A stretch of 64,000 nucleotides of DNA from Anaeramoeba ignava BMAN (Eukaryota; Protista; Anaeramoebae), in NCBI GenBank assembly GCA_028826165.1, contig JAPDFW010000070.1:620001-684000 (forward strand), in the 5' to 3' direction. Below, one piece after another: positions 1 to 30,026 of the stretch. The position numbers and the translations under genes are program-made. The notes beneath the pieces were generated by a model, which ran no database searches, was not told the DNA's origin, and saw only the letters and a list, made by a program, of their open reading frames with translations. Each line of letters starts with the position of its first letter. Within the stretch, counting starts at the first letter, position 1.

Positions 1-3000
1 TCCAATTTCTGATACAATTTCAGGTGCAAGCGATCCATATTGTCAATTCAAACATGGTGGAAAAGAATTCAAAACCAAAACAATTAAATCATCTCTTTAT
101 CCAAGTTGGAAAGAAACATTTGTTTTACATTTAAGTTCTGAAGAACTCAAAAATTCAATTAAACTTGAAGTTTGGGATTGGGATAGAGTTGGTAAAAACG
201 ATTTCCTTGGAAGAGCCAAAGTTAGAATTCATCAATTAATCAAGAATATGATTGAAGATGGAAAATTAATTTACAAAGCCACATACGAATCACCAATAAG
301 AGAACCAATAAATCCCAAAACAGGGCAACAACTAAATCATGGAACAATACTTGGAAGGATAAGAGTTGAATTCCCTGAAAATACAAATTTAAATGAATTG
401 AAAATGGCTTGTGGAATTATTCCTGAAAGATTAAAATACATTTTGCCTCATCAGGAAAACAAAATCGCAATTGCATTCAAAGTTAGTAAAGGGAAAAACA
501 TTCCAATTTCTGATACACTTTCAGGTGCAAGTGATCCATATTGTCAATTCAAACATGGAGGAAAAGAATTTAAAACCAAAACAATCAAATCATCTCTTTA
601 TCCAAGTTGGAAAGAAACATTTGTTTTACATTTAAGTTCTGAAGAATTCAAAAATTCAGTTAAACTTGAAGTTTGGGATTGGGATAGAGTTGGTAAAAAC
701 GATTTTATTGGAAGAGCCAAAGTTAGAATTCATCAATTAATCAAGAATATGATTGAAGATGGAAAATTAATTTACAAAGCAGCATATGAATCACCAATAA
801 GACTTCCAATAAATCCCAAAACAGGAGAACAACCAAATCATGGAACAATACTTGGAAGGATAAGAATTGAATTCCCTGAAAATACAGATTTAAATGGATT
901 ACAAATGGCTTGTGGAATTATTCCTGAAGTATTGAAATATCAATTACCAACTCAAAAAAACAAAATCGCAATTGCATTTAAAGTTAGTAAAGGAAAAACA
1001 TTCCAATTTCTGATACACTTTCAGGATCAAGTGATCCATATTGTCAATTCAAACATGGTGGAAAAGAATTCAAAACCAAAACCATTAAATCATCTCTTTA
1101 TCCAAGTTGGAAAGAAACATTTGTTTTGCATTCAAATTTTGAAGAATTCAAAAAATCAGTTAAACTTGAAGTTTGGGATTGGGATAGAGTTGGTAAAAAT
1201 GATTTTATTGGAATTGCCAAAGTTAGAATTCATCAATTAATCAAGAATATGATTGAAGATGGAAAATACATTTACAAAGCAGCATATGAATCACCAATAA
1301 GACTTCCAATAAATCCCAAAACAGGAGAACAACCAAATCATGGAACAATACTTGGAAGAATAAGAATTGAGTTTCCTGAGAATACAAATTTCAAAGATTT
1401 GCAAATGGCTTGTGGAATTATTCCTGAAAGATTGAAATACGAATTATCTCATCAAAAAGATAAAATTGCAATTTCATTGAAAATTAGTAAAGGGAAAAAC
1501 ATTCCAATTTCTGATACACTTTCAGGATCAAGTGATCCATATTGTCAATTTAAACAAGGAGAAAAAGAATTTAAAACCAAAACCATTAAATCATCTCTTT
1601 ATCCAATTTGGAAAGAATATTTCACTTTTCATTTAAGTTTGGAAGAATTGAAACATTCAATTAAATTACAAGTTTGGGATTGGGATAGAGTTGGTAAAAA
1701 TGATTTTATTGGAATTGCAAAAGTTAGAATTCATCAATTAATTAAGAATATGATTGAAGATCAAAAGTTAATTTACAAAGCAACATACGAATCACCAATA
1801 AGACAACCAATTAACCAAAAAACAGGAGAACAACCAAATCATGGAACAATATTTGGAAGATTAAGAGTTGAATTACCAGAAACAACTGATTTTAATGAAC
1901 TGAAGATTGCTTGTGGAGTAATTCCTGAAGTATTGAAATATCAATTACCAGTTGAAAAAAACAAAATTGCAATTTCATTGAAAATTAGTAAAGGAAGAAA
2001 TATTCCAATAGCAGATATTTCAGGAGCAAGTGATCCTTATTGCCAATTCAAACAAGGAGAACAAGAATTTAAAACCAAAACCATTAAATCATCTCTTTTC
2101 CCAGTTTGGAAAGAATATTTCACTTTTCATTTAAGTTTTGAAGAATTCAAAAAATCAGTTAAACTTGAAGTTTGGGATTGGGATAGAGTTGGTAAAAATG
2201 ATTTCCTTGGACTTGCAAAAGTTAGAATTAATCAATTAATAAAGAATATGATTGAAGATCAAAAGTTTATTTATCAAACAACATACGAATCACCAATAAG
2301 ACAACCAATAAATCCCAAAACAGGAGAACAACTATATCATGGAACACTATTTGGAAGATTAAGAATTGAATTACCAGATAATACAAATTTCACTGAATTG
2401 AAAATGGCTTGTGGAATAATTACTCAAAGATTGAAATACGAATTACCATCTCAAGAAAATAAAATTGCAATTTCATTGAAAATTAGTAAAGGAAGAAATA
2501 TTCCAATAGCAGATATTTCAGGAGCAAGTGATCCCTTTTGCGAATTTAAACAAGGAGAAAAAGAATTTAAAACCAAAACAGTTAAATCTTCACTTTATCC
2601 AATTTGGAAAGAATATTTCACTTTTCATTTAAGTTTTGAAGAATTAAAACATTCAATTAAATTACAAGTTTGGGATTGGGATCGACTTAAAAAAAATGAT
2701 TTCCTTGGAATTGCGAAAGTTAGAATCAATCAATTAATGAAAAATATAATTGAAGATGGAAGATTAATTTATCAAACAACATATGAATCACCAATAAGAC
2801 AACCAATTAATCCCAAAACAGGAGAACAACCAAATCATGGAACAATATTTGGAAGATTAAGAATTGAATTACCAGAAACAACTGATTTTAATGAATTACA
2901 AATGGCTTGTGGAATTATTCCTGAAGTATTGAAATATAAATTACCATCTCAAGAAAACAAAATTGCAATTTCATTGAAAATTAGTAAAGGAAGAAATGTT

Positions 3001-6000
3001 CCAATAGCAGATATTTCAGGAGCAAGTGATCCTTATTGTCAATTTAAACAAGGAGAAAAAGAATTCAAAACCAAAACAATTAAATCATCTCTTTTCCCAA
3101 TTTGGAAAGAATATTTCACTTTAAATTTAAGTTTTGAAGAATTAAAACATTCAATTAAATTACAAGTTTGGGATTGGGATCGACTTAAAAAAAATGATTT
3201 CCTTGGAATTGCCAAAGTTAGAATTAATCAATTAATTAAGAATATGATTGAAGAAGGGAAATTAATTTACAAAACAACATATGAATCACCAATAAGAGAA
3301 CCAATAAATCAAAAAACAGGAGAACAACCAAATCATGGAACAATATTTGGAAGATTAAGAGTTGAATTACCAGAAACAACTGATTTTAATGAATTACAGA
3401 TGATTTGTGGAATTATTCCTGAAGTATTAAGATATCAATTACCAGCTCAAGAAAACAAAATTGCAATTTCATTCAAAATTAGTAAAGGAAGAAATATTCC
3501 AATAGCAGATATCACAGGAGCAAGTGATCCATATTGTCAATTTAAACAAGGAGAAAAAGAATTCAAAACCAAAACAATTAAAACATCTCTTTTCCCAAGT
3601 TGGAAAGAATATTTTACTTTATATTTCAGTTTTGAAGAACTTATGCATTCAATTAAATTACAAGTTTGGGATTGGGATAGAGTCACAAAAAATGATTTCC
3701 TTGGAATTGCCAAAGTTAGAATCAATCAATTAATCAAAAATATGATTGAAGAAGGGAAATTAATTTACAAAACAACATATGAATCACCAATAAGACAACC
3801 AATTAATCCCAAAACAGGATCACAAACGAATCATGGAACAATATTTGGAAGATTAAGAGTTGAATTGCCAGAAACAACTGATTTTAATGAATTAAAAATG
3901 GTTTGTGGAATAATTCCTGAAGTATTGAAATATAAATTACCAGCTCAAGAAAACAAAATTGCAATTTCATTGAAAATTAGTAAAGGAAGAAATGTTCCAA
4001 TAGCAGATACTTTCTCACATTTAAGTGATCCATATTGTCAATTCAAACAAGGAGAAAAAGAATTTAAAACCAAAACAATCAAATCTTCACTTTATCCAAT
4101 TTGGAAAGAATATTTTACTTTATATTTAAGTTTTGAAGAATTAAAACATTCAATTAAATTACAAGTTTGGGATTGGGATCGAGCTAAAAAAGATGATTTC
4201 CTTGGAATTGCGAAAGTTAGAATTAATCAAATAATAAAGAATATGTTTGAAGAAGGGAAATTAATTTACAAAACAACATATGAATCACCAATAAGAGAAC
4301 CAATAAATCCCAAAACAGGAGAAGAGCCATATCATGGAACAATATTTGGAAGATTAAGAGTTGAATTGCCAGAAACAACTGATTTCAGAGAATTGAAAAT
4401 GGTTTGTGGAATTATTCCTGAAAGATTAAAATATGAGTTGCCACCTCAAGAAAACAAAATTGCAATTTCATTAAAAATTAGTAAAGGAAGAAATGTTCCA
4501 ATAGCAGATACTTTCTCACATTTAAGTGATCCATATTGTCAATTCAAACAAGGAGAAAAAGAATACAAAACCAAAACAATTAAATCTTCACTTTATCCAA
4601 TTTGGAAAGAATATTTTACTTTATATTTAAGTTTTGAAGAATTAAAACATTCAATTAAATTACAAGTTTGGGATTGGGATAGAGCTAAAAAAGATGATTT
4701 CCTTGGAATTGCGAAAGTTAGAATCAATCAAATAATAAAGAATATGTTTGAAGAAGGGAAATTAATTTACAAAACAACATATGAATCACCAATGAGAGAA
4801 CCAATTAATCCCAAAACAGGAGAAGAGCCATATCATGGAACAATATTTGGAAGATTAAGAGTTGAATTGCCAGAAACAACTGATTTTGACGAATTGAAAA
4901 TGGTTTGTGGGATGATTCCTGAAGTATTACAATATGAGTTGCCAGCCGAAGAAAACAAAATTGCAGTTTCAATGAAAATATCAAGAGGAAGACAAGTTCC
5001 TGTGGGAGATATCTCAGGAACAAGCGATCCATACTGCAAATTTAGTTATGGAGGAAAGGAATACAAGACAAAAATGGTTAAAACAACACTTTTCCCAATT
5101 TGGAAGGAAACATATCTTCTGCATTTCAGTTTTGAAGAACTTAAACACGCTCTTCGTATCAGCGTATACGATTGGGATCGAGTATCACGAAACGATTTCC
5201 TTGGGATTATCAAGATGCGCGTTCATCGAGCAATTAAAGATATTGTTGAAGAAGGGAAGTATATTTACAAAACAACATATGAATTTCCGATTATCTCTCC
5301 AGTCGACTACAGATCAGGACCACGAACTGGCACTGGAAGAATACTCGGAAGACTAAGAGTGGAATTGCCGCAAAACACAGACTTTACAGAGCTGAAGACA
5401 ATATGCGGGCTTATTCCAGAAGTATTGAAATACGAATTGCCAAGTGAAGAAAACAAAGTCGCAATATGGATGAAAGTCAGCAGAGGAATAAGCATTCCAG
5501 CCGGAGATAAATTGCATCACCGCAGCGATGCATACTGCAAATTTACATATGGCGATAAAGAATATAAGACCCAAACAAGATACAGCACACTTTGTCCGAT
5601 TTGGAAGGAGCAATTTATTCTTCATTGCGATATTCTTGAGCTGAAGAAGTCGTTGAAACTCCATATCTGGGATTACGACAGAGCAAAGAAAGACGACTAT
5701 CTTGGCGTGGCGAAATTCCGCATCAATAACCTGATCAAAGATCAATTAAGTCCTGATAAAGCAATTTATAAAATTGAGTATGATTCGCCACTAAGAAAAG
5801 TGATCGATCCAAGAACAGGTCAAGAGCCGAAGAACGGGATTGTCTTCTGTCGGCTGCGCATCGAGTTCCCGCAGAACACTGATTTCAATACTCTGAGGAT
5901 GGTGTGCGGATTAGCACCTGAGAGAATGAAATACGAGCTGCCTTGCGAAGAAAACAAAATTTCGGTTTCATTGAAAATCTCAAGAGCAAAAAATTTGCCA

Positions 6001-8455
6001 ATTGGAGACACTATTAGTCAATTTAGCGATCCATATTGCGAGTTTAAACACGCAGGAAAAGAGTACAAAACAGAGACTCTCAAATCAACACTTTATCCGA
6101 TCTGGAAACAGAAGTTTATGATGCATCTGTCGATGGAGGAGTTTATGCAGAAAATCAGGATCGGTGTTTGGGACTGGGACTTTGCAAAGAAAAACGATCT
6201 TTTAGGAATTGCAAAGTTGCGATTGATGAGTGTTTTAAGAGAAGCAGCAAAAAAACAATACCCACAAATCGAGGGTATTTCATTTCAAAATGTTGCGTTT
6301 GAGGCACAAAAAATGGAAGAATTCCGATTGTGGAATGGTGGGGTTGTTTCCGTTCCGGTAAGATTGCCTGACGATCCAAAAAAGGGACCACAAGATCATC
6401 ACGGGGAAATTATATGCAGAATTCGGATTGAGTTTCCAGAGAACAGCGAGCTTGGAGATGTTCTTATTTGCTCAGGAATTCTCCCTGCACCGCGAGTGTA
6501 CAAACTCGTCGACAGCCAGAACACAAACAACTGGGGCATCAGCGTTCGAATTAACAAGGCACTCGGGATTGTCGGTGCAGACAACAACGGAATGAGCGAG
6601 GCATATTGCAAAATTGTAGTTGGAAAAGAAGAGCTTTCAACAGAACGTTTTAAGTCCAGTTTATATCCCAAATGGAAACAGACCTTGACTCATATTTTCC
6701 CTCCATTCTCGATCCCCAAAGTTCGTCTCGAGTTATTTGCCCGCAAGAAATTAAAAACAGATGTCTCCATCGGCTATCTCAATTACTCCATAACTGATCT
6801 TATTAAAGAACGCTATCAAACGGACGGTTCTTTGATTGATGTCAAGAAACATCTCCCGATTAAATACACCCCCAAATACGGTATTGAGCTCCCATCTCCT
6901 CACGGCACTCTCTCCGTCACAACACGCATCGAAATCCCTGCACAAGCCTTCCAAAACACTGTCGATCGTGTTAATAACCCGGATGCTTATAGAGAACCCC
7001 TTTTCTCCTTCGATTCCCTCACACACACAACTTGGCGTCCAAATTATCGCCAACAAAGCCCGCCATCTCAAGCGTCCGTCTTCAAAGAAAACCGTCAACT
7101 CATACTGCGTGCTCAAGGTGGGACATCAAGTCTTCAAAACAAAAACAATCGCCAAACATCTTCATCCTAAATGGCAAGATGAGTTTAAAATGCTTGGCAC
7201 AGCTTTCGGTCTCCGGAAGATTTATATATCACTTTTCCACGAGAGAAAGAAGATTCTTTCCGACAAGCCCAAAAAACCGTTGCTTATCGGAGTTGCCAAG
7301 TTTGATATCCTGAAGGAATTGCGTCACCAACTAGAGGCCCCAAAACCGTTTTATTTCATCGACAAATGGTTTGCTGTCGAGATCCAAGAGAATCCCAAAA
7401 CAGGTGCAAACAAACAAGTCGGCGAGATCAATCTCAAGCTCCGCATTGAGTGGAACCCTATGCTCAACCATCAGATCGTGCAAGCCATCTGCGGATTCAA
7501 CGGAGCAAATTACATCCCAACAGAAATTTTCGATCCAAAAGAGCTTAATGGCAACCAATGCGGCGTTGATTTACTGATAAAGAAAGGTCTTGATCTTCCC
7601 CCAAGCGATCTTTCTGGACTTTCCGATCCTTACTGCATCTTCAATTTCGGGAAATCAAAGACAGAATATCGCACACAAACATGCCCAAACACACTCTATC
7701 CACTTTGGCGAGAAAGATTCAAGCTTATCGGCTCAATCGAGGAATTCAAGAAGCTTGAGCTTGTGTTCATGGACTATGATACAGTCACAAAAGACGATGT
7801 TTTGGGCTCAATCAAGCTTAAATTCTGGAAACTTCTCGGAGAAAATCTCAGACAGAATCAATCCGTTTATATTTTCAAGAAAGATTTTGATCACATCAAA
7901 AAAACCGATACTCGCAAAGTTGTCGGTCAAATTCACGGAAAAGTCTCCATGATTATTGCGATCCAAATTCCACTCAATTTCGACTATAACGAATGGGCGC
8001 AGATTGTTGGCATTCAACCACGTTTCTATGAACCTTCTCTCGAAGTTCCGCAAGGCAAATGGGGACTTATCTTCAATGTTCGTCGAGCCATTGGTATTCC
8101 CAGTACCGATCTTAATGGCTTTTCTGATGCTTATTGCGTCATTCATATTGGAACTGAGAATCTCAAAACAAAAATCCAGTTCAAAACTTTGAACCCTATT
8201 TGGAAAGAGTCGTTTACGTTTATTGATGACCCTAAAGAGCTCAAGAAGATCTATATTGATATTTATGATCGTGATAAGTTCTCAAAGGATGACCGTGTTG
8301 GTGATGTTAAAATTCCTTTTGCTGATTTGGTTTCTGCTCATCCTCCAAGAAATGGTTGTTCTGTTACTTTTTTCAAAGAATGGTTCCAGATATTTGATAA
8401 AGAGAAAAAGGAACATGGAAAGATTCTAATTTGGTTCCGTCTTGAGATGAATTAA
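1..8455 (+). CDS. Giant tandem C2-domain protein (at least 17 C2 units, 5'-partial, two apparent frameshifts)
   Basis: Frame 2 is open from position 2 (PISDTISGASDPYC). About 166-167 aa units recur with C2 motifs D-x2-3-G-x-SDPYC, KTKTIKSSLYPxWKE and VWDWDRxxKNDFxG. ORFs 248-1240, 1126-7170 and 6836-8455 join via a 1-nt loss at ~991-995 and a frame change in a CA run at ~7019-7030. Stop TAA at 8453-8455. No introns are needed. Confidence 0.92.
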
Positions 8456-8554
8456 CTTTCTTTTTTTTAATTCATTTTCTTTAATTTCGTTTTTTTAATT
8501 CTTTTTTTAATTCTTTTTTTAATTCTTTTTTTAATTCTTTTTTTATTAAATTTT

Positions 8555-9850
8555 TAATTCAAATTCTTTTCCACTTTTTAATTTTAATTTGGATTTTGAT
8601 TTAATTTTGATTTAATTTTAATTTTGATTTAGATTTTGATTTAATTTTAATTTTGATTTAATTTAATTTTGATTTAATTTTGATTTTAATTTTGATTTGG
8701 TTTTAATTTAATTTTGATTTTAATTTTGATTTAATTTTAATTTAATTTTAATTTAATTTTAATTTTGATTTAGATTTTGATTTAATTTTAATTTTGATTT
8801 TGATTTTGATTTAATTTTGATTTAATTTTGATTTAATTTTGGTTTAATTTTGATTTAATTTTGATTTAATTTTGGTTTAATTTTAATTTAATTTTGGTTT
8901 TAATTTTGATTTAATTTTGATTTAATTTTAATTTAATTTTAATTTAATTTTGATTTAATTTTAATTTAATTTTGATTTAATTTTGATTTAATTTTGATTT
9001 AATTTTGATTTAATTTTGATTTAATTTTGATTTAATTTTGATTTAATTTTGATTTAATTTTGATTTAATTTTGATTTAATTTTGATTTAATTTTGATTTA
9101 ATTTTGATTTAGATTTTGATTTAGATTTTGATTTTGATTTAATTTTAATTTAATTTTGATTTAATTTTAATTTTAATTTAATTTTGATTTAGATTTTGAT
9201 TTAATTTTGATTTAATTTTGATTTAATTTTAATTTAATTTTGATTTAATTTTGATTTAATTTTAATTCAAATTCTTTTCCACTTTTTAATTTTAATTTAT
9301 TTTTGATTTAATTTTAATTTAATTTTGATTTAATTTTGATTTAATTTTGATTTAATTTTGATTTAATTTTGATTTAATTTTGATTTAATTTTGATTTAAT
9401 TTTAATTTAATTTTGATTTAATTTTGATTTAATTTTGATTTAATTTTGATTTAATTTTGATTTAATTTTGATTTAGATTTTGATTTAATTTTGATTTAAT
9501 TTTAATTTAATTTTGATTTAATTTTAATTTAATTTTGATTTAATTTTGATTTAATTTTGATTTAATTTTGATTTAATTTTGATTTAATTTTGATTTAATT
9601 TTAATTTAATTTTGATTTAATTTTAATTTAATTTTGATTTAATTTTGATTTAATTTTGATTTAATTTTGATTTAATTTTGATTTAATTTTGATTTAATTT
9701 TATTTTGATTTTGATTTAATTTTGATTTAATTTTAATTTAATTTTGATTTAATTTTGATTTAATTTTAATTTAATTTTAATTTAATTTTAATTTAATTTT
9801 GATTTAATTTTAATTTAATTTTGATTTTGATTTAGATTTAATTTTAATTT
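8555..9850. repeat. Intergenic minisatellite (TTTTGATTTAA)n with a duplicated unique seed
   Basis: 11-bp unit repeated for about 1.3 kb. The block TTTAATTCAAATTCTTTTCCACTTTTTAATTTTAATTT occurs at ~8553 and ~9261. Confidence 0.9.
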
Positions 9851-10364: not shown

Positions 10365-13129
10365 ATGTCAGTTAGATTAAAGTCTCTTGATGAAAGACAC
10401 ACAGAAATTCTTCGTGAACTTGTTCGTCGTCCTGAAAATAAGTTTTGTGCTATGTGTAATGAAAGAGTAATTATAATTTAAATTTTTTAAAATAAAAATA
10501 AAAATAAAAAAGAAAAACTGAATAAAATTTTTTTAAATATAATAAAAAAAAAAGGGTCCAAATTATGCATGTTTAGATTTCAATACATTTGTTTGTACAA
10601 TTTGCAGTGGAATTCAGTAAAAATTATAAATAAAATTATTATTAAAATTATTATAAAATTATAAAAATATAAAAATTAATAAAATTAATAAAATTAAAAT
10701 TAATAAGTCGATCATTTGGACATCGAGTTAAAAGTATTGCAATGGCTTCTTTTTCATCTTCAGAAATAAAAAACCTTCAAAATGGAGGAAATGCAGTTGA
10801 TCGTAAAACATATTTATCAAAATGGAGTGAAAGCAAATTTAAAAAACCTCAACCAGGTGAAATTGATAAAATTAAAGAATTTATTAAACTTAAATATCAA
10901 GAAAAAAGGTTTGTTTTCTAATTTACCATTTAATAATAATTTATAAATAATTTTAATAATAAATTTAATAATAATTTTAATAATAAATTTAATAATAATT
11001 TTAATAATAATTTTAATAATAATTTTAATAATAAATTTAATAATAAATTTAATAATAAATTTAATAATAATTTTAATAATAATTTTAATAATAATTTTAA
11101 TAATAATTTTAATAATAATTTTAATAATAATTTTAATAATAATTTTAATAATAATTTTAATAATAATTTTAATAATAAATTTAATAATAAATTTAATAAT
11201 AAATTTAATAATAATTTTAATAATAAATTTATAATAATTTTAATAATAAATTTAATAATAAATTTTAATAATAATTTTAATAATAATTTTAATAATAAAT
11301 TTAATAATAATTTTAATAATAATTTTAATAATAATTTTAATAATAATTTTAATAATAATTTTAATAATAAATTTAATAATAAATTTAATAATAATTTTAA
11401 TAATAATTTTAATAATAATTTTAATAATTTTAATAATAAATTTAATAATAAATTTAATAATAATTTTAATAATAAATTTAATAATAATTTTAATAATAAA
11501 TTTAATAATAAATTTAATAATAATTTTAATAATAAATTTAATAATAAATTTTAATAATAAATTTAATAATAATTTTAATAATAATTATAATAATAATTTT
11601 AATAAATTTAATAATAATTTTAATAATAATTTTAATAATAAATTTAATAATAATTTTAATAATAATTTTAATAATAATTTTAATAATAATTTTAATAATA
11701 AATTTATAAATAATTTTAATAATAATTTTAATAATAAATTTAATAATAAATATAATAATAAATTTAATAATAAATTTAATAATAAATTTAATAATAATTT
11801 ATTAATAAATTTAATAATAAATATAATAATAAATTTAATAATAAATATGAGAACAGATGGTTTGCTAAAAAGAAATCACATAAACATCATGAAGAAGATG
11901 ATGAAAATGAAGTAAAAGATGAAGTTCCTCGTAAAAAAACAAGTTTAAAACTTTCTACAAAACCAAGAAGTCCGAAAAGATTTAATTTAAAAAAACCAAC
12001 ATCAAAACCAAGAGTTGTAGTTGGAGATGATAGTGATGATGATGATAAGGATAGTGATGATGATAATAGTGATAATGATAGTGATAGTGATAGTGATAAT
12101 TATGTTAAAAAATCACATAAATCAAAACACAACAAAAAACCAATAAAAAAACCAATAAAAAAACCAATAAAAAAACAACACAAACAAGAAGAAACAAAAG
12201 TAGAATCATTAATTCAAACAGAACAACCACAAGTTGAAGTTAAAAAACCAAATTCTGGTAATAAATTTATTTATTTAATTTATTTAATTTATTAATTTAT
12301 TTAATTTATTTAATTTATTTAAAAACAAAATAAAAATTATTAAATTAAAAAAGGAGGACTTTTAATTGATGAAATGCTTTCATTAGGATTAGATACATCA
12401 TTTACACAAAAACAACAACAAGAACAACAACTACAACAACAACAACTACAATTCCAACAACAACAAAATCAACAACAAAATCAACAACAAAATCAACAAC
12501 AAGATTTTATACAACAAAGTGGATTAGGAAATAATAAGATCAATGCACTTAAAGATTTAGTAACAGAATTTGGAGGAGAAAGTACAACAACTGGATTTGG
12601 ATGGAATAGAGTTAGAAATGCACTTACAGGTGGTGGAGGATTTAATACAGGAGGTGGTTTTAATACAGGAGGATTTAATACAGGTGGTGGTTTTAATACT
12701 GGTGGTGGTTTTAATACTGGTGGTGGTTTTAATACTGGTGGTGGATTTAATACTGGTGGTGGTTTTAATACTGGTGGTGGTTTTAATACTGGTGGAGGTT
12801 TTAATACTGGTGGATTTGGAAATCAACAATTTTCAAATCTTTCACCTCAACAATTACAACAACTTCAACAAATGCAACAAATGCAACAAATGCAACAAAT
12901 GCAACAATTACAACAAATGCAAAGAATGCAACAAATGCAACAAATGCAAAATCAAAATCAAAATCAAAATCAAAATCAAAATCAAAATCAAAATCAATTT
13001 TGGAATCAAACTCAAAATACTCAACAACAAAATACTCAACAAAATACTCAACAAAATCAATTTTGGAATCAAACTCAATCAAATACACAACAACCAAAAA
13101 CAACTCCTAAATCAAATTCTTTCATTTAA
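10365..13129 (+). CDS. ArfGAP-domain protein, AGFG/HRB-like, with GGGFNT repeats and Q-rich tail
   Basis: Exons 10365-10466, 10555-10616, 10708-10908, 11857-12257, 12354-13129 (all GT-AG). The spliced protein has CAMC-x16-CTIC-SGIHR, HRVKSIAMASF, GGN and KYQEKRW. Confidence 0.9.
10925..11845. repeat. Intronic 12-bp minisatellite (AATAATAATTTT/AATAATAAATTT)n
   Basis: Fills ArfGAP intron 10909-11856. Confidence 0.9.
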
Positions 13130-23740: not shown

Positions 23741-24365
23741 TTAACAAAAAAAATAATATGTCTTATTTTATGTTTTGTTTGTTCAATAAATAAATGGGGT
23801 TATGATCGTTTCCAGTTAATAAAAAATAATAAAAAGAAAATAATAAAAAAAAAAATAAGAAGAAAATAATTAAAAAAAATGAAATTAAAAAAAATAATAA
23901 AAATAATTAAAAAATCACAAGTGTCAATTTAACAATAAAAAAAAATAAAAAAAAAACAAAAAAGGAGAAAAATTAAATAAATTTGAAAAGAAGAAAAATT
24001 AAAAAAAAAAAAGGAGAATAAATTATTTTTTTTTTTCCACTTTCTTCCTTTCTCTTTTCTTCTTTTGATCAATCTTATCTAAATTAAAATTAAAATTTAA
24101 AATTAAAATTAAAATTTAAAATTAAAATTTAAGAAAGTAGAATAAATAATTTTGCTTTGTCGACATTTCTATTTTTACAATCAAATTAATGAATTTGCAT
24201 TTTATGTAAATTTAATAAAACCAAACAAAAGCAAACAAATTTAAAAAATTTTATTTGATCTTCAAAAAATTTTTCTTCTTCATTTTTTTATTTTGTTTTT
24301 AATTTTTCTCAACCAACAACTTTATTATTATTATTTTTTATTTTTTATTTTTACAATTTTTCCAA

Positions 24366-27300
24366 ATGGGGAATTCAAATCCAGAAAAAAGTCAGATAGA
24401 AAAAAATAAGAAAATTGAAGAGCAACTTCAAAAAGAAGCAGAAAATTATCAAAAAGAAGTGAAGTTATTAATTCTTGGTAATTTAATTAATTCAATTAAA
24501 ATTCAATTAAATCAATATTCAATTCAAATCAATATTCAATTAAATCAATATTCAATTCAATCAATATTCAATCAAACAGGAAGTGGTGAATCAGGAAAAA
24601 GTACTTTTGTTAAACAAATTAAAATTCTATTTCAAAATGGATTTTCTAAACAAGAAAAAATAATTTTTCGAAGAGTTATTCAAAGAAATCTTATCGATCA
24701 TACAAAAGTATTAATTAAAGCTTGTAAAAAATTGCAAATTAAATTTAAACCTGAAAATGAGGTAATTCCAACTAAAAAAAACAATTCAATATTTAATATT
24801 TAATTCAATTTTTAATATTCAATTCAATATTTAATTCAATATTCAATTCAATATTCAATATTCAATTCAATATTTAATATTCAATATTCAATTCAATATT
24901 CAATTCAATTCAATTCAATTTAATTCAATTTTTAATTCAATTTTTAATTCAATTTAATATTCAATATTCAATTCAATATTCAATTCAATTCAATTCAATT
25001 TAATTCAATTTTTAATTCAATTTTTAATTCAATTCAATATTCAATATTTAATTCAATTTTTAATTCAATATTCAATTCAATTCAATATTCAATTCAATAT
25101 TCAATTCAATATTCAATTCAATTCAATTTTCAATTCAATTCAATTTTCAATTCAATATTCAATTCAATATTCAATTCAATATTCAATTCAATATTCAATT
25201 TAATATTTAATTCAATTTTCAATTCGATATTCAATTCAATATTCAATTTAATATTTAATTTAATATTCAATTCAATATTTAATATTCAATATTTAATATT
25301 CAATTCAATTTAATTCAATATTCAATTTCAATATTCAATTCCAATATTTAATATTCAAATATTTTAATATTCATTCAATTTATTCAATATTCAATTCAAT
25401 ATTCAATTCAATATTCATTCAATATTCAATATTCAATTCAATATTTTAATCAATATTTATTCAATATTTAATTCAATTCAATTTTAATATTTAATTCAAT
25501 ATTCAATTCAATATTTAATTCAATTCAATTTAATTCAATATTCAATATTTATTCAATATTCATTCAATATTTAATTCAATATTATTCAATATTCGATTCA
25601 ATATTTAATTTGATTCAATATTTAATTCAATTCAATATTTATTCAATATTCATTCAATATTCAATTCAATATTCATTCAATATTATTCAATATTCAATTT
25701 CACCAATTTTTCAATTAATTTAATATTCAATATTCAATTTAATATTCATTCAATATTCAATTTCATATATTCAATTCAATTCAATTCAATATTCAACCCA
25801 ATATTCAATTCAATATTCAAATTCAATTCAATATTCAATATTCAATATTCAATTATTCAATATTTAATATTTAATATTTAATTCAATATTCAATATTCAA
25901 TATTCAATTTCAATATTCATTCAATATTCAATTCAATTCAATATTCATTCAATATTCATTCCAATTTTCAATTTTCAATTCAATATTTAATATTCAATTC
26001 AATATTTATTCAATATTCAATATTCAATTCAATATTCATTCAATATTCAATTTCAATATTCAATATTCAATATTCAATATTTTTAATTCAATATTTAATT
26101 CAATATTTACCAATTTAATTCAATTCAATTTATATTTTATTCAATATTCAAATTCAATATTTAATTCAATTCAAATTCAATATTTAATATTTAATTCAAT
26201 TCAATTTAATTCAATATTCAATATTAATTCAATATTCATTCAATATTTTAATTCAATATTCGATGTCAATATTCAATATTCAATATTTATTTTAATTCAA
26301 TATTTAATTATTCAATATTGATTAAATATTCAATTTCAATATTCAATTCAATATTCGATTCAATATTCGATTCAATATTCAATTCAATATTTGATTCAAT
26401 ATTCAATATTTAATATTCATATAATATTCAATTCATTCAATATTCAAATTCAATATTCGATTCAATATTCATTCCAATATTTCATTTCAATATTTAATTT
26501 AATTCAATATTTAATTTCAATATTTCGATTCAATATTCAATTCAATATTCAATTCAATATTATTCAATATTCATTTCAATATTCATTCAATATTCGATTC
26601 AATATTCATTCAATTTTCAATTTCAATTTATTATTAATATTTAATATTCAATATTCAATATTAATATTCAATATTCAATTCAAAAATATTCAATTCAATA
26701 TTCAATATTCAATATTCAAAACCCAATAAATATCAATATTCAATTCAATATTCAATATTCGATTCAATTTCAAATTTTATTCAATATTTAATATTTAATA
26801 TTCAATATTTCAATATTTAATTCAATATTCAATATTCATTTATTCAATATTCAATTCAATATCAATTTATTCAATATTCATTCAATAATTCAATATTCAT
26901 TCAATTCAATATTCATTCAATTCAATATTCAATTTACCAATATTCATTCAATATTTAATATTATTCGAATATTTATTCAATATTCATTTCAATATTTCAA
27001 TATTCAAATATTTAATATTTTATTTCAATATTTATTTATTTCAATTTATTTAATTCAATATTCAATATTTAATATTTAATATTAAATATTCAATATTTAT
27101 TATTTAATTCAATATTTACCCAATTCATTATTCAATATTTATTCCAATATTCAATATTCAATATTTAATTCAATATTCAATATTTAATATTTAATTCAAT
27201 ATTTAATTTTTTATTCGATTCAATATTTGATTCAATATTTAATTTAATATTCATATTCAATATTCAATTTCAATTCAAATTCAATATTTAACATTTAATT

Positions 27301-30026
27301 CAATATTTAATATTTAATTCAATATTCAATATTTCATTATTTATTTAATAAATATTTAATATTCAAATTCAATATTTAATTCAATATTTAATTCAATTTT
27401 CAATTTTAATTTAATATTCAATTCAATATTTAATTCAATAAATCAATATCAATATTCAAAATTCAATTCAATAATTCAATATTCATTCAATAATATTCAA
27501 TATTCAATTCAATATTAATATATTCAAAATTTCAATTCCAATATTCATTCAATATTAATTTTATTCAAATATTATTCAAAATATTTATTCAATATTAAAT
27601 ATTTCAAATATTTAATTCCAAATTTAAATTATTCAATTTTATTTAATATTCGATTCGATATTCGATTCAATATTTTCAATATTCAATATTCCAATATTCA
27701 ATATTCAATTCAATATTCAATATTCAATATTTATTTCAATATTCAAATTCAATATTTAATTCAATATTTAATTCAATTCAATTCAATATTTTAAAATATT
27801 CAATTCAATATTATTATTTCAATATTCAATATTCAATATTCATTCAATATTCAATATTTAATTCCAATATTTAAATTTAATTCAATATTCAATATTCAAT
27901 ATTTAATTCAATATTCAATATATTTAATATTTAATTCAATATTTAATTCAATACTTAATTCAATTTAATTTTAATATTCAATTCAATATTTAATTCAATA
28001 CTTAAATCAATATTCAATATTCAATTCAATATTTAATATTCAATATTCAATTCAATATTCAATTCAATATTTAATTCAATATTCAATTCAATATTTAATA
28101 TTCAATTCAATATTTAATTCAATATTCAATATTCAATATTTAATATTCAATTCAATATTCAATATTCAAATTTATTTTATTCAATATTCAATTTAATTTA
28201 ATTTAATTCAATATTTAATTCAATTTAATATTCAATTTAATATTTAATTTAATAGAAACTAGCCAAAGATTTCGTTTATTCAGCTCATTATACAAATGAT
28301 TCATTTGAACAAAATATAGCAAATGATATCCAAAATTTATGGAAAGATCCAGCAATAAAAAATGCTTATAGACAAAGAGAAAAATTTCATCTTCCAGAAT
28401 CTGCAGGATAGTAATTAATTAAATTCCTTTAAAATTAACAAAATTATTTACTAAATATTCGAAAAAAAAAATTCTACTTTCCAAAATGTGGAATAAATTT
28501 TTCTTCTTTTTCTTTTTTCTTAGTTTTTTTAGAAATATGGAAAAAATAATTTCTTCAAATTATCAACCAACAGATTCTGATATTCTTCTTTGTAGAATCC
28601 CAACTACTGGAGTTCAAACTTTAAGCTTTGTTCATTCAAATTATCCATGGAGGTAAATTTCATTCTCTATCTGAATTAAATCTATAAAATAATTCCAAAA
28701 TAAAATAATCCAAAAATAAAATAATCCAAATTAATTAATCCAAAATAAATTAATTCAAAAATAATTAATCCAAAATTAATTAATCCAAAATAAATTAATC
28801 CAAAATAAATTAATTCAAAATAATCCAAAATAAATTAATTCCAAAATAAATTAAATCCAAATAAATTAATTCCAAAATAAATTAAATTCAAAATAAATTA
28901 ATTCCAAATAAATTAATCCAAAATAAATTAATCCAAAATAAAATAATTAAATCCAAAATAAATTAATTCCAAAATAAATTAAATTCAAAATAATCCAAAA
29001 TTAATTAATCCAAAATAAATTAATTCCAAAATAATTAATCCAAAATAAATTAATCCAAAATTAATTAATCCAAAATAAAATAATTCCAAAATAAATTAAT
29101 CCAAAATAAATTAATCCAAAATAAATTAATTCCAAAATAAATTAATTCCAAAATAAATTAATCCAAAATAATCCAAAATAAATTAATCCAAAAATAATTA
29201 AATCCAAAATAAATTAATCCAAAATTAATTAAATCCAAAATAAATTAAATTCAAAATAATTTAATTCCAAATAAATTAATTCCAAAATAAATTAATCCAA
29301 AATAATTAAATCCAAAATAATCCAAAATAATCCAAAATAAATTAATTAATCCAAAATAATTAATTCCAAAATAAATAATTCAAAATAATCCAAAATTAAT
29401 TAATCCAAATTAATCCAAAATTAATTAAATCAAAATAAATTAATTCAAAATAATTTATTCCAAAATTAATTAAATAAGGGTTATTGATGTTGGCGGACAA
29501 AGATCCGAAAGAAGAAAATGGATTCATCATTTTGATAATGTTACTGTTTTAATATTTATAATTGCAATAAGTGAATTTGACCAAAAATTAATGGAAGATG
29601 AAACAACAAATCGATTAGAAGAAGCATTAGAATTATTTAAAAAAACAATTAATAACCAATATTTTTCAGGAACAAACTGCATATTGATTTTCAATAAAAT
29701 TGATATGTTTAAATTAAAATTGAAAAAACGGAAATTAGCTGATTGGTTTCCTGATTATACTGGTGGTAATGATTTTGAAAGTGCTTGCGAATTTATACAA
29801 GGAATGTTTATGAAAGTCCCAATAACAAAGAAATCTCATCCTCGTAAAATTATCTCTCATTTTGCCTGTGCAACAAATACTCAAAGCGTTAAACAAATTT
29901 TTGTAACTTTTTTTTTGTTGTGTTTTTATTAAAAAAAAAATTAAATTTTCTTTTCTTTGATTTTCTTTATTATTTTAGAATGTAATCGAGAAACAAATAG
30001 TTACGGATCATATGAAAAGAGTTTGA
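24366..30026 (+). CDS. Heterotrimeric G-protein alpha subunit
   Basis: Exons 24366-24477, 24580-24761, 28256-28410, 28524-28652, 29479-29902, 29979-30026. Motifs MGN (myristoylation), GSGESGKST, RIPTTG, DVGGQRSERRKW, NKID and CAT. Confidence 0.95.
24785..28250. repeat. 3.5-kb intronic satellite (TTCAATATTCAA)n
   Basis: TTCAA and TATTCAA modules fill G-alpha intron 24762-28255. Confidence 0.92.
28690..29470. repeat. Intronic minisatellite (ATCCAAAATAAATTA)n
   Basis: Fills G-alpha intron 28653-29478. Confidence 0.9.

What the first reader, a model, noticed from the sequence alone, without database searches (positions are those of the whole stretch)
1..8455. Giant protein built almost entirely of at least 17 tandem C2 domains
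Seen: one 498-501-nt unit (a C2 domain with an unusually long loop, YKTTYESPIRQPINPKTGEQPNHG, plus a helical linker, TDFNELKMACGIIP) repeats at least 17 times and the array continues beyond the window start. Most units keep the Ca2+-ligand aspartates (D...SDPY, WDWD...ND). There is no C-terminal TM segment. Known: ferlins carry about 6-7 C2 domains, extended synaptotagmins up to 5 and MCTPs 3-4, and all of these are membrane-anchored. Inference: a long, multivalent Ca2+/phospholipid-binding filament or tether (membrane repair, organelle or symbiont contact) of an architecture I do not recognise.
Basis: partly seen in the sequence, partly recalled or inferred. Interest (0 to 1): 0.8.

Follow-up and report, generated by a model that had tools for sequence, protein, structure and literature searches.

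The report
Giant anchor-less 25-C2-domain protein gene
This is a real gene of the anaerobic amoeba Anaeramoeba ignava that encodes a protein of about 4,240 residues built only of 25 calcium/lipid-binding C2 domains with no membrane anchor; it is probably a calcium-triggered multivalent membrane binder, and the public annotation splits it in two because of assembly errors.

Summary
The window carries 17 C2 units, and 8 more lie upstream. The gene runs from an ATG 4,264 nt before the window start (contig C60) to TAA at 8453-8455. That gives about 4,239 aa and 25 C2 domains, with no other Pfam domain, signal peptide or TM segment.

The genome is Anaeramoeba ignava (Metamonada). In the assembly the ORF is broken twice. 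All four public read sets drop one base at 7016-7019, so that break is an assembly error. The break at 992-994 (GG where both neighbouring units have GGG) was not tested.

NCBI models this gene as two proteins of 3,784 and 421 aa. A transcriptome ORF covers residues 1-740, so the 5' part is transcribed.

Nineteen units keep all five synaptotagmin-type Ca2+-ligand aspartates. AlphaFold gives a confident C2 fold with a long beta7-beta8 hairpin and a short helical linker.

Two paralogues exist on contigs C104 (3,901 aa, intact) and C83. This scan had already noted both on other DNA of this genome. End units match by position across the paralogues; the central arrays group by gene.

C2-only giants with 11-28 matched C2 stretches also occur in Luapelamoeba, Histomonas, Trichomonas, Cyanophora and Diphylleia. 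I found none characterised.

The function as a Ca2+-dependent membrane tether or coat is inferred, not shown.

The parts
1..8455 (+). In-window part of one gene: the last 17 of 25 C2 units plus the stop codon. The gene begins outside the window at contig C60:615737 (L003:5736).
   Evidence: Open frames: frame 2 to 1237, frame 1 from 991 to 7167, frame 2 from 6836 to 8452. Pfam C2.
1..990 (+). Units U09 (starts 16 nt before the window) and U10. Both are Ca2+-competent C2 units with linker.
   Evidence: Unit HMM hits. DDDDD ligand pattern.
992..994 (+). Frame change 1: AGTAAAGGAAAAAC here, against AGTAAAGGGAAAAAC in both neighbouring units. One G is apparently missing from a homopolymer.
   Evidence: Not tested by reads. 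The NCBI model bridges it with a false intron that removes about 26 residues of U11.
991..5979 (+). Units U11-U20. With U08-U10 they form the central array of 13 similar 166/167-aa units. All ten keep the five Asp ligands.
   Evidence: Nucleotide identity between the central units U12-U18 is 85-95%; identity to the edge units U19 and U20 is 59-70%. dN/dS is 0.23-0.45 for the pairs where dS could be estimated.
5980..6549 (+). Unit U21: a Ca2+-competent C2 with an insertion of about 25 aa.
   Evidence: It pairs with C104 unit 19 in the tree.
6577..6948 (+). Unit U22: a degenerate C2 with ligand pattern DEAKV.
7016..7019 (+). Frame change 2: CCCT in the assembly carries one base too many.
   Evidence: Contigs of all four runs leave out one letter, at 7016 in X2 and X3 and at 7019 in X1 and X4. 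Either deletion joins frame 1 to frame 2 as ...FSFDS(S/P)HTQLGVQ.... This fits the paralogue alignment.
7091..7498 (+). Unit U23: a degenerate C2 with no Asp pentad.
7583..8452 (+). Units U24 and U25: Ca2+-competent C2 domains. The protein ends with the last C2 strand (...ILIWFRLEMN).
   Evidence: The C-terminus is conserved in both paralogues.
8453..8455 (+). TAA stop codon, followed by T-rich simple repeats.

Best explanation
This is one intron-less gene of Anaeramoeba ignava, at contig C60 about 615,737-628,455 on the + strand. It encodes a soluble cytosolic protein of about 4,239 residues made only of 25 C2 domains. Each domain is joined to the next by a conserved linker of about 25-30 residues that holds a 7-residue helix. 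In the N-cap, units 1-3 lack Ca2+ ligands and unit 4 carries a lysine-rich insertion of about 95 aa. In the C-cap, two units lack ligands. Nineteen units keep the complete synaptotagmin/PKC-type Asp pentad. Inferred mechanism: at resting Ca2+ the protein is soluble. When Ca2+ rises, many C2 units bind Ca2+ and insert their loops into acidic cytosolic leaflets. Multivalency then gives switch-like, very high-avidity binding that coats, bundles or cross-links membranes. Shown here: gene structure, domain content, ligand conservation, predicted fold, purifying selection, paralogy, and transcription of the 5' end. Inferred only: Ca2+ and lipid binding, tethering, and the cellular site of action. 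The two frame breaks are assembly errors, one shown by reads and one presumed. The public split into 3,784 + 421 aa models is therefore wrong.
For: Organism: the closest named database hits are A. ignava proteins on contigs whose lengths equal C83, C104 and C60. AT-richness matches PMC11550330. Gene limits: the ATG and the first residues (MW.(V/I)D...CEPYC.FK) and the C-terminal strand are conserved in all three paralogues. Domains: Pfam finds only C2, as 9 + 2 + 12 + 3 stretches, which is 25 units by the unit HMM. Ligands: 19 of 25 units read DDDDD, and the units align column for column with Syt1 C2A/C2B. Fold: AlphaFold2 on two units gives pLDDT 90.9 and pTM 0.77, with two 8-stranded sandwiches, long beta7-beta8 hairpins and linker helices. 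The best structural matches are E-Syt2 C2A-C2B, otoferlin, myoferlin, dysferlin and synaptotagmins. No TM: maximum KD19 is 1.33. Frame break 2 is an assembly error in all four read sets. The assembly came from R9.4 Nanopore reads with Racon, Nanopolish and Pilon, which makes homopolymer indels plausible. Selection: dN/dS between units is 0.23-0.45 where it could be estimated, and no two compared units are more than 95.4% identical. There are 2,059 open codons after break 1 in DNA of 28% GC. Transcription: a EukProt A. ignava Trinity ORF (P0093) matches residues 1-740. The intact paralogue C104 is a 3,901-aa open frame. Tandem C2 fragments of synaptotagmins cross-link membranes with Ca2+, whereas single C2 domains do not (abstract of PMC2726287).
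Against: No biochemical or localisation data exist. Frame break 1 (992-994) was not checked with reads, so a very recent real frameshift is not excluded. The only transcript ORF found stops at residue 740 because of a 1-nt difference in an A8 run. No transcript evidence was obtained for the array or the 3' part. A word search for array-derived fragments of 182-577 aa found nothing. Six units lack a full ligand set, so part of the protein must act without Ca2+. No orthologue was seen in A. flamelloides, so the family is not tied to a trait shared by the genus.
Confidence: 0.6

Rival explanations
1. The gene is a recently inactivated or decaying copy. The frame change at 992-994 is real, so only the first roughly 1,750 residues (10 C2 units) are made. 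The intact paralogue on C104 carries the function.
For: Break 1 was not tested with reads. The one transcript ORF in the databases carries another 1-nt indel in an A8 run and ends at residue 740 + 26. Run-specific differences suggest two haplotypes, one of which could be defective.
Against: Break 2 looked just as real in the assembly and is an error in all four read sets. Break 1 is a one-base homopolymer difference inside near-identical repeats of a Nanopore assembly, which is the worst place for short-read polishing. Downstream, 2,059 codons stay open in 28% GC DNA, and the units show dN/dS of 0.23-0.45.
Confidence: 0.1
2. The protein is real, but its main role is not membrane tethering. It could be a high-capacity cytosolic Ca2+ buffer or sensor, at 19 sites with 2-3 Ca2+ each. 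Or it could be a protein-protein or cytoskeletal scaffold that uses C2 domains as interaction modules.
For: There is no anchor at either end. Six C2 units lack Ca2+ ligands. A family-specific beta7-beta8 hairpin (P-K/R-T/S-G..P..G) and the linker are conserved across all three paralogues, and they have no known lipid role. Many C2 domains are known to bind proteins (general knowledge).
Against: The Asp pentad is kept in 19 units. So are hydrophobic residues at both loop tips (I or T after the first Asp, V or L after DWDR) and the lysine-rich KxKTKTIK strand. These are the features of lipid-inserting Syt/PKC-type C2 domains. The identification of the specific lipid-contact residues rests on my memory of those families.
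Confidence: 0.15
3. The number of central units is an assembly artefact. The array was expanded or collapsed during long-read assembly, so '25 C2 domains' is off by some units even though the gene is real.
For: The array is a 498-nt repeat at 85-95% identity in a Nanopore assembly that shows residual errors. Short-read contigs end at the edge of the most similar units, about 290 nt upstream of 5150.
Against: The compared units are all distinct (maximum 95.4% identity) and each keeps its frame. The tree shows ordered sub-groups of neighbouring units, as expected for real stepwise duplication. The paralogues have arrays of similar size, 11 and about 8 units.
Confidence: 0.1

Closest known systems
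Synaptotagmin-1 C2A/C2B and PKC alpha/beta/gamma C2 domains (Ca2+-dependent C2 domains)
   Same: Single units align over the C2 core at E 1e-16 to 1e-22. The loop-1 (D...SDPY) and loop-3 (DxDxxxxxD) aspartates lie in the same columns. Hydrophobic loop tips and a lysine-rich strand are present.
   Different: Those proteins carry one or two C2 domains plus a TM anchor or a kinase. Here there are 25 domains and nothing else. The units also have a longer beta7-beta8 hairpin with a conserved P-K-T-G..P..H-G turn and a conserved helical linker.
Ferlins (otoferlin, myoferlin, dysferlin)
   Same: They are large multi-C2 Ca2+-dependent membrane proteins and rank among the best sequence and fold matches.
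   Different: Ferlins have 5-7 C2 domains, FerI/FerA/FerB/DysF modules and a C-terminal TM helix. None of these extra parts is present here.
Extended synaptotagmins / tricalbins and MCTPs
   Same: They carry tandem C2 arrays used for Ca2+-regulated membrane tethering. E-Syt2 C2A-C2B is the top Foldseek hit.
   Different: They have 2-5 C2 domains together with an SMP domain and a TM hairpin (E-Syt), or C-terminal TM regions (MCTP). No such domain is found here. The two-domain TM-score is only about 0.3, so the inter-domain arrangement differs.
Unnamed C2-only giant proteins of other protists: Luapelamoeba hula 3,416 aa, Histomonas meleagridis 3,283 aa, an ENA metagenome protein of 3,909 aa, Cyanophora paradoxa 2,147 aa, Diphylleia rotans 2,497 aa, Trichomonas vaginalis 1,682 aa
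   Same: Each has 11-28 matched C2 stretches and no other Pfam domain (B9-C2 and WW matches below Pfam's cut-offs aside). All are annotated only as 'C2 domain-containing protein' or 'Ca2+-dependent lipid-binding protein'.
   Different: Their units repeat every 135-145 aa or so. They match the Anaeramoeba unit profile only over the first 95 or so positions, the generic C2 core. They lack the hairpin and linker signature and the N- and C-terminal caps. Overall identity is 22-24%.
The two A. ignava paralogues, on contig C104 (3,901 aa, 23 C2) and contig C83 (about 20 C2)
   Same: They share the same start and end, the same cap units position by position, the same 166-aa unit, and the same lysine-rich insertion in unit 4.
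   Different: The central arrays have 13, 11 and about 8 units, and they group by gene rather than by position. Identity to C104 is 58-67% within array units. The C60 gene has GC-richer caps.

Membership tests
C2 domain superfamily (Pfam PF00168) | Significant match to the C2 profile and an 8-stranded beta-sandwich fold | tested here: met
   Pfam E-values run from 1e-42 to 1e-232, with 26 stretches that correspond to 25 units. The AlphaFold model has 8 strands per unit at pLDDT 90.9. Foldseek matches solved C2 structures.
Ca2+-dependent (synaptotagmin/PKC-type) C2 domains | Five acidic Ca2+ ligands in loops 1 and 3 (Syt1 D172, D178, D230, D232, D238) | tested here: met
   All five Asp are present in 19 of 25 units and four of five in U06. 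They are absent in U01-U03, U22 and U23. Column equivalence to Syt1 comes from the HMMER alignment. Residue numbering is from established knowledge.
Ca2+-dependent (synaptotagmin/PKC-type) C2 domains | Measured Ca2+-dependent binding to acidic phospholipids | not testable with these tools
   This needs liposome co-sedimentation or ITC on recombinant units.
Ferlins | FerI/FerA/FerB (and DysF) modules between the C2 domains | tested here: not met
   Pfam scans of all three pieces return only C2 above the cut-offs. A true ferlin of A. flamelloides with PF08151 and PF16165 was seen separately.
Ferlins | C-terminal transmembrane helix | tested here: not met
   The protein ends in the last C2 strand. 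The maximum KD19 of 1.33 is below TM level.
Extended synaptotagmins / tricalbins | SMP lipid-transfer domain and N-terminal TM hairpin | tested here: not met
   There is no SMP match and no hydrophobic segment. The protein starts directly with a C2 domain.
MCTP | C-terminal phosphoribosyltransferase-C/TM region (PF08372) | tested here: not met
   PF08372 is absent from the Pfam results. No TM segment is present.
Copines | Two C2 domains followed by a vWA-like domain | tested here: not met
   Only C2 was found.
   Position-wise clades of cap units across C60, C104 and C83 have 95-100% support. Starts and ends are shared. Invariant columns are listed.

The most novel reading that the evidence does not exclude
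Anchor-less poly-C2 giants form an unrecognised, recurrent class of Ca2+-triggered membrane 'Velcro' or molecular rulers in protists. The evolvable central array (13, 11 or about 8 units here) would set the reach or spacing between membranes. In A. ignava the three paralogues would organise or repair the elaborate plasma-membrane-connected symbiosome network.
Probability: 0.15. Interest if true: 0.7.

Novelty: new variant of a known kind. Interest (0 to 1): 0.45.

Why it matters
C2 domains are the classic Ca2+-dependent membrane-binding module. All well-studied multi-C2 proteins (synaptotagmins, ferlins, E-Syts, MCTPs) have at most about 7 of them and are anchored in a membrane. A soluble protein with 25 C2 domains, 19 of them apparently Ca2+-competent, extends that design principle a long way. 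It offers a natural test case for avidity, cooperativity and membrane cross-linking by C2 arrays. Similar C2-only giants in several eukaryotic supergroups suggest an overlooked protein class. On the practical side, the public gene models for this locus (3,784 + 421 aa) are wrong because of assembly indels and should be merged.

Tried and rejected
- A third word search, with units U11-U12 (window:997-1986), looked for transcript-derived fragments across break 1. Nothing scored at E <= 1e-30, so break 1 stays untested.
- Read laying was limited to one call and 6,000 letters. I laid only 5150-8520, outside the TRF-detected array, to avoid sending a long repeat. Unit count and break 1 were therefore not checked with reads.
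- Run X3 comes from another study, its library kind is unknown, and its contig depth is uneven (205 against 71). It might be RNA, but this cannot be shown from contigs.
- The Pfam matches to RLMM_N, OGG_N and DUF2790 have no single stretch passing the cut-off. They are summed noise over repeated units and were rejected.
- Introns as the cause of the two frame changes were rejected. Break 1 is a one-base homopolymer difference from the neighbouring units, and break 2 is removed by reads. The NCBI 'intron' at break 1 deletes part of a C2 domain.
- Three literature searches for a characterised poly-C2 family found none. The A. ignava genome paper and the A. pumila preprint do not mention C2 domains.
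- No orthologue was found in A. flamelloides.
- The joined 4,239-aa reading, with X at both breaks, was used only inside scripts for domain counting. All database tools were given the open pieces separately.
Full report
**What is in the sequence.** Window 1-8455 is coding-like DNA at 28-43% GC in a genome whose intergenic DNA is 4-20% GC.
- Tandem Repeats Finder reports a 498-nt unit, 10.3 copies at 89% match, at 11-5145.
- Translation shows a repeated 166/167-aa unit. Pfam finds only C2 (PF00168): 2 stretches in window 2-997, 12 in 991-7167 and 3 in 7001-8452.
- In the assembly the reading frame changes twice. Frame 2 is open to 1237, frame 1 runs from 991 to 7167, and frame 2 runs from 6836 to the TAA at 8453-8455.

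**Extension and gene limits.** The window is contig C60:620001-684000 of a 42.8-Mb, 147-contig assembly.
- The upstream 10 kb (L003) shows the frame open back to an ATG 4,264 nt before the window start (L003:5736). A stop lies two codons further up, and AT-rich intergenic DNA precedes it.
- That piece holds 9 Pfam C2 stretches, which are 8 units, because unit 4 is split by a lysine-rich insertion of about 95 aa.
- With X at the two breaks (used in scripts only) the product is 4,239 aa with 25 C2 units. It has no other domain and no TM-like segment; the maximum 19-residue Kyte-Doolittle mean is 1.33.
- No intron is needed anywhere.

**Organism and public records.** Word and exhaustive protein searches identify the genome as Anaeramoeba ignava. 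The named hits sit on contigs of 371,713, 1,030,941 and 1,651,858 bases, which are the lengths of C83, C104 and C60. The extreme AT content matches the published genome, 80.65% A+T, GCA_028826165.1.
- This locus is in NCBI as two models.
  - P0232 (3,784 aa) starts at the same Met. It bridges break 1 with a false intron that deletes about 26 residues of unit 11. After break 2 it runs out of frame into a junk tail.
  - P0104 (421 aa) is the C-terminal remainder, starting from an internal Met.
- A EukProt Trinity ORF from the A. ignava transcriptome (P0093, 766 aa) is identical to residues 1-740, so at least the 5' 2.2 kb is transcribed. It then departs from the genome through a 1-nt length difference in an A8 run.

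**The two frame breaks.**
- Break 2. The assembly reads CCCT at 7016-7019. Logan contigs of all four public runs that hold this DNA leave out one letter there, at 7016 in X2 and X3 and at 7019 in X1 and X4. Either deletion joins frame 1 to frame 2 as ...EPLFSFDS(S/P)HTQLGVQIIANK.... That is where the alignments to the paralogues switch frame. Break 2 is therefore an assembly error.
- Break 1. The sequence reads AGTAAAGGAAAAAC, where both flanking units read AGTAAAGGGAAAAAC. This is a one-base homopolymer difference inside near-identical repeats.
  - The assembly was built from R9.4 Nanopore reads with ABruijn, Racon, Nanopolish and Pilon, so such a residual error is plausible.
  - In support, 2,059 codons remain open after it in 28% GC DNA.

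**Anatomy of the units.** An alignment of the 25 units shows all five Asp ligands in U04, U05, U07-U21, U24 and U25, which is 19 units. U06 has four of five. U01-U03, U22 and U23 have no full set.
- HMMER aligns a central unit to Syt1 C2A and C2B with ADISGASDPY against ALDMGGTSDPY and WDWDRVGKND against YDFDRFSKHD. Hits to ferlins, PKC alpha/beta/gamma and E-Syt2 follow.
- AlphaFold2 on two consecutive units, using a 30-row alignment of two-unit windows from the three paralogues, gives pLDDT 90.9 and pTM 0.77.
- Each unit is an 8-stranded sandwich with long beta7 and beta8 strands joined by an 11-residue turn.
  - A linker of about 30 residues follows, with a 7-residue helix.
- Foldseek's best matches are E-Syt2 C2A-C2B, otoferlin, myoferlin, dysferlin and synaptotagmins. 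The two-domain TM-scores are only about 0.3, so single domains match but the tandem arrangement does not.
- G158, G164, R171 and E173 of the hairpin and beta8 are invariant across all 30 rows. This is a family-specific signature.

**Paralogues and evolution.** A six-frame search of the genome finds two more genes of this kind. One is on C104 (one open frame, 3,901 aa from Met, 23 C2). The other is on C83 (1,402 + 1,906-aa frames, about 20 C2). Earlier notes of this scan describe both.
- A maximum-likelihood tree of 67 units groups the seven N-terminal and five C-terminal units by position across the three genes, with 95-100% support. C60 is sister to C104.
- The central units group by gene: 13 in C60, 11 in C104 and about 8 in C83.
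- The ancestor therefore already had both caps. The central arrays then expanded independently or were homogenised by unequal exchange.
- Within C60, compared units differ at 5-15% of nucleotides across the central units U12-U18, with a maximum identity of 95.4%. dN/dS is 0.23-0.45 where dS could be estimated.
- Individual units are thus under purifying selection, and the array is not a stack of identical copies.

**Relatives elsewhere.** The exhaustive search used the N-terminal 745 residues. Besides the three A. ignava genes, it finds only generic C2 matches. No protein shares the N-cap, and no A. flamelloides orthologue appeared in any search.
- Among the generic matches are C2-only giants:
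  - Luapelamoeba hula, 3,416 aa, 24 matched stretches
  - an ENA metagenome protein, 3,909 aa, 28 stretches
  - Histomonas meleagridis, 3,283 aa, 21 stretches
  - Trichomonas vaginalis, 1,682 aa, 13 stretches
  - Cyanophora paradoxa, 2,147 aa, 12 stretches
  - Diphylleia rotans, 2,497 aa, 12 stretches
- Pfam counts 11-16 C2 stretches and nothing else above its cut-offs in six such proteins.
- Their units repeat every 135-145 aa or so and match the Anaeramoeba unit profile only to about position 95 of 178. They share the C2 core but not the hairpin and linker.
- The general architecture is therefore recurrent in protists, but this family is distinct.
- I found no paper that characterises any such protein. 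The Anaeramoeba genome papers do not mention C2 domains.

**How it most likely works.** The following are shown.
- A soluble protein with 19-20 apparently Ca2+-competent Syt/PKC-type C2 domains in series.
- Degenerate C2 domains at both ends.
- A conserved polybasic insert in unit 4.
- Conserved short linkers.

The following is inferred from established C2 biology.
- Each competent unit binds 2-3 Ca2+ and then acidic phospholipids through loops 1 and 3.
- Twenty such sites in one chain give steep cooperativity and very high avidity. A Ca2+ rise would switch the protein from soluble to membrane-bound, where it coats or cross-links membranes.
- Cross-linking by tandem but not single C2 domains is documented for synaptotagmins (abstract of PMC2726287).
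- The identification of loop-tip hydrophobic residues and of the KxKTKTIK strand as lipid contacts rests on my memory of Syt1 and PKC alpha and is a lead only.
- Where the protein acts is unknown. Candidates include plasma-membrane repair, phagosomes and the symbiosome network.

**Rivals.**
- A recently broken gene (0.1). Break 1 is untested and one transcript ORF is frameshifted. Against this stand the break 2 precedent, the long open frame downstream and purifying selection.
- A Ca2+ buffer or a protein scaffold rather than a membrane tether (0.15).
- A mis-estimated unit count (0.1).

**Verdict.** The functional reading is reasonable but untested. The architecture is an extreme, anchor-less variant of known multi-C2 Ca2+ sensors. 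It belongs to a three-gene family that was found only in A. ignava in these searches, and similar unstudied giants exist in other protists. Interest is moderate.

Noticed in passing
contig C60:615737-628455 (L003:5736 to window 8455): The gene is compositionally uneven. The cap-coding parts are 40-46% GC, but the central array is 27-29% GC. The C104 paralogue shows the same trend more weakly (30-36% against 24%). C83 is nearly flat.
   Followed up: partly
L008:8100-8480 (contig C83 about 166,100-166,480): The C83 paralogue is broken by several frame changes and a partial duplication (NDLIGRSKVK occurs twice) within about 300 nt. It looks like a poorly polished repeat region. The NCBI model P0001 starts just there with odd small exons.
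   Followed up: partly
L003:7933-7940 (A8 run, residue about 740 of the protein): The A. ignava Trinity transcript ORF P0093 differs from the genome by a 1-nt length change in this A8 run and terminates 26 codons later. It could be an allele, transcriptional slippage or a Trinity error.
   Followed up: partly
window 6081, 6342, 6351, and run-specific sites 6822-7897: All four read sets differ from the window at 6081 (C>T), 6342 (G>A) and 6351 (C>T), which are probably assembly base errors. Other differences are specific to single runs and suggest two haplotypes, including Ser or Pro at break 2.
   Followed up: no
window 8577-9850 and 10929-11844: There are very long simple-sequence arrays just downstream of the gene: an 11-nt unit TTTAATTTTGA x116 and a 12-nt unit TTTAATAATAAT x77.
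   Followed up: no
window 24001-30000: A stretch of 13-18% GC has extreme negative GC skew, -0.34 to -0.87, meaning almost no G on the + strand.
   Followed up: no
window 1-8455 (public models P0232 + P0104): The NCBI annotation splits this single gene into a 3,784-aa and a 421-aa protein. It includes a false intron at break 1 and an out-of-frame tail after break 2.
   Followed up: yes
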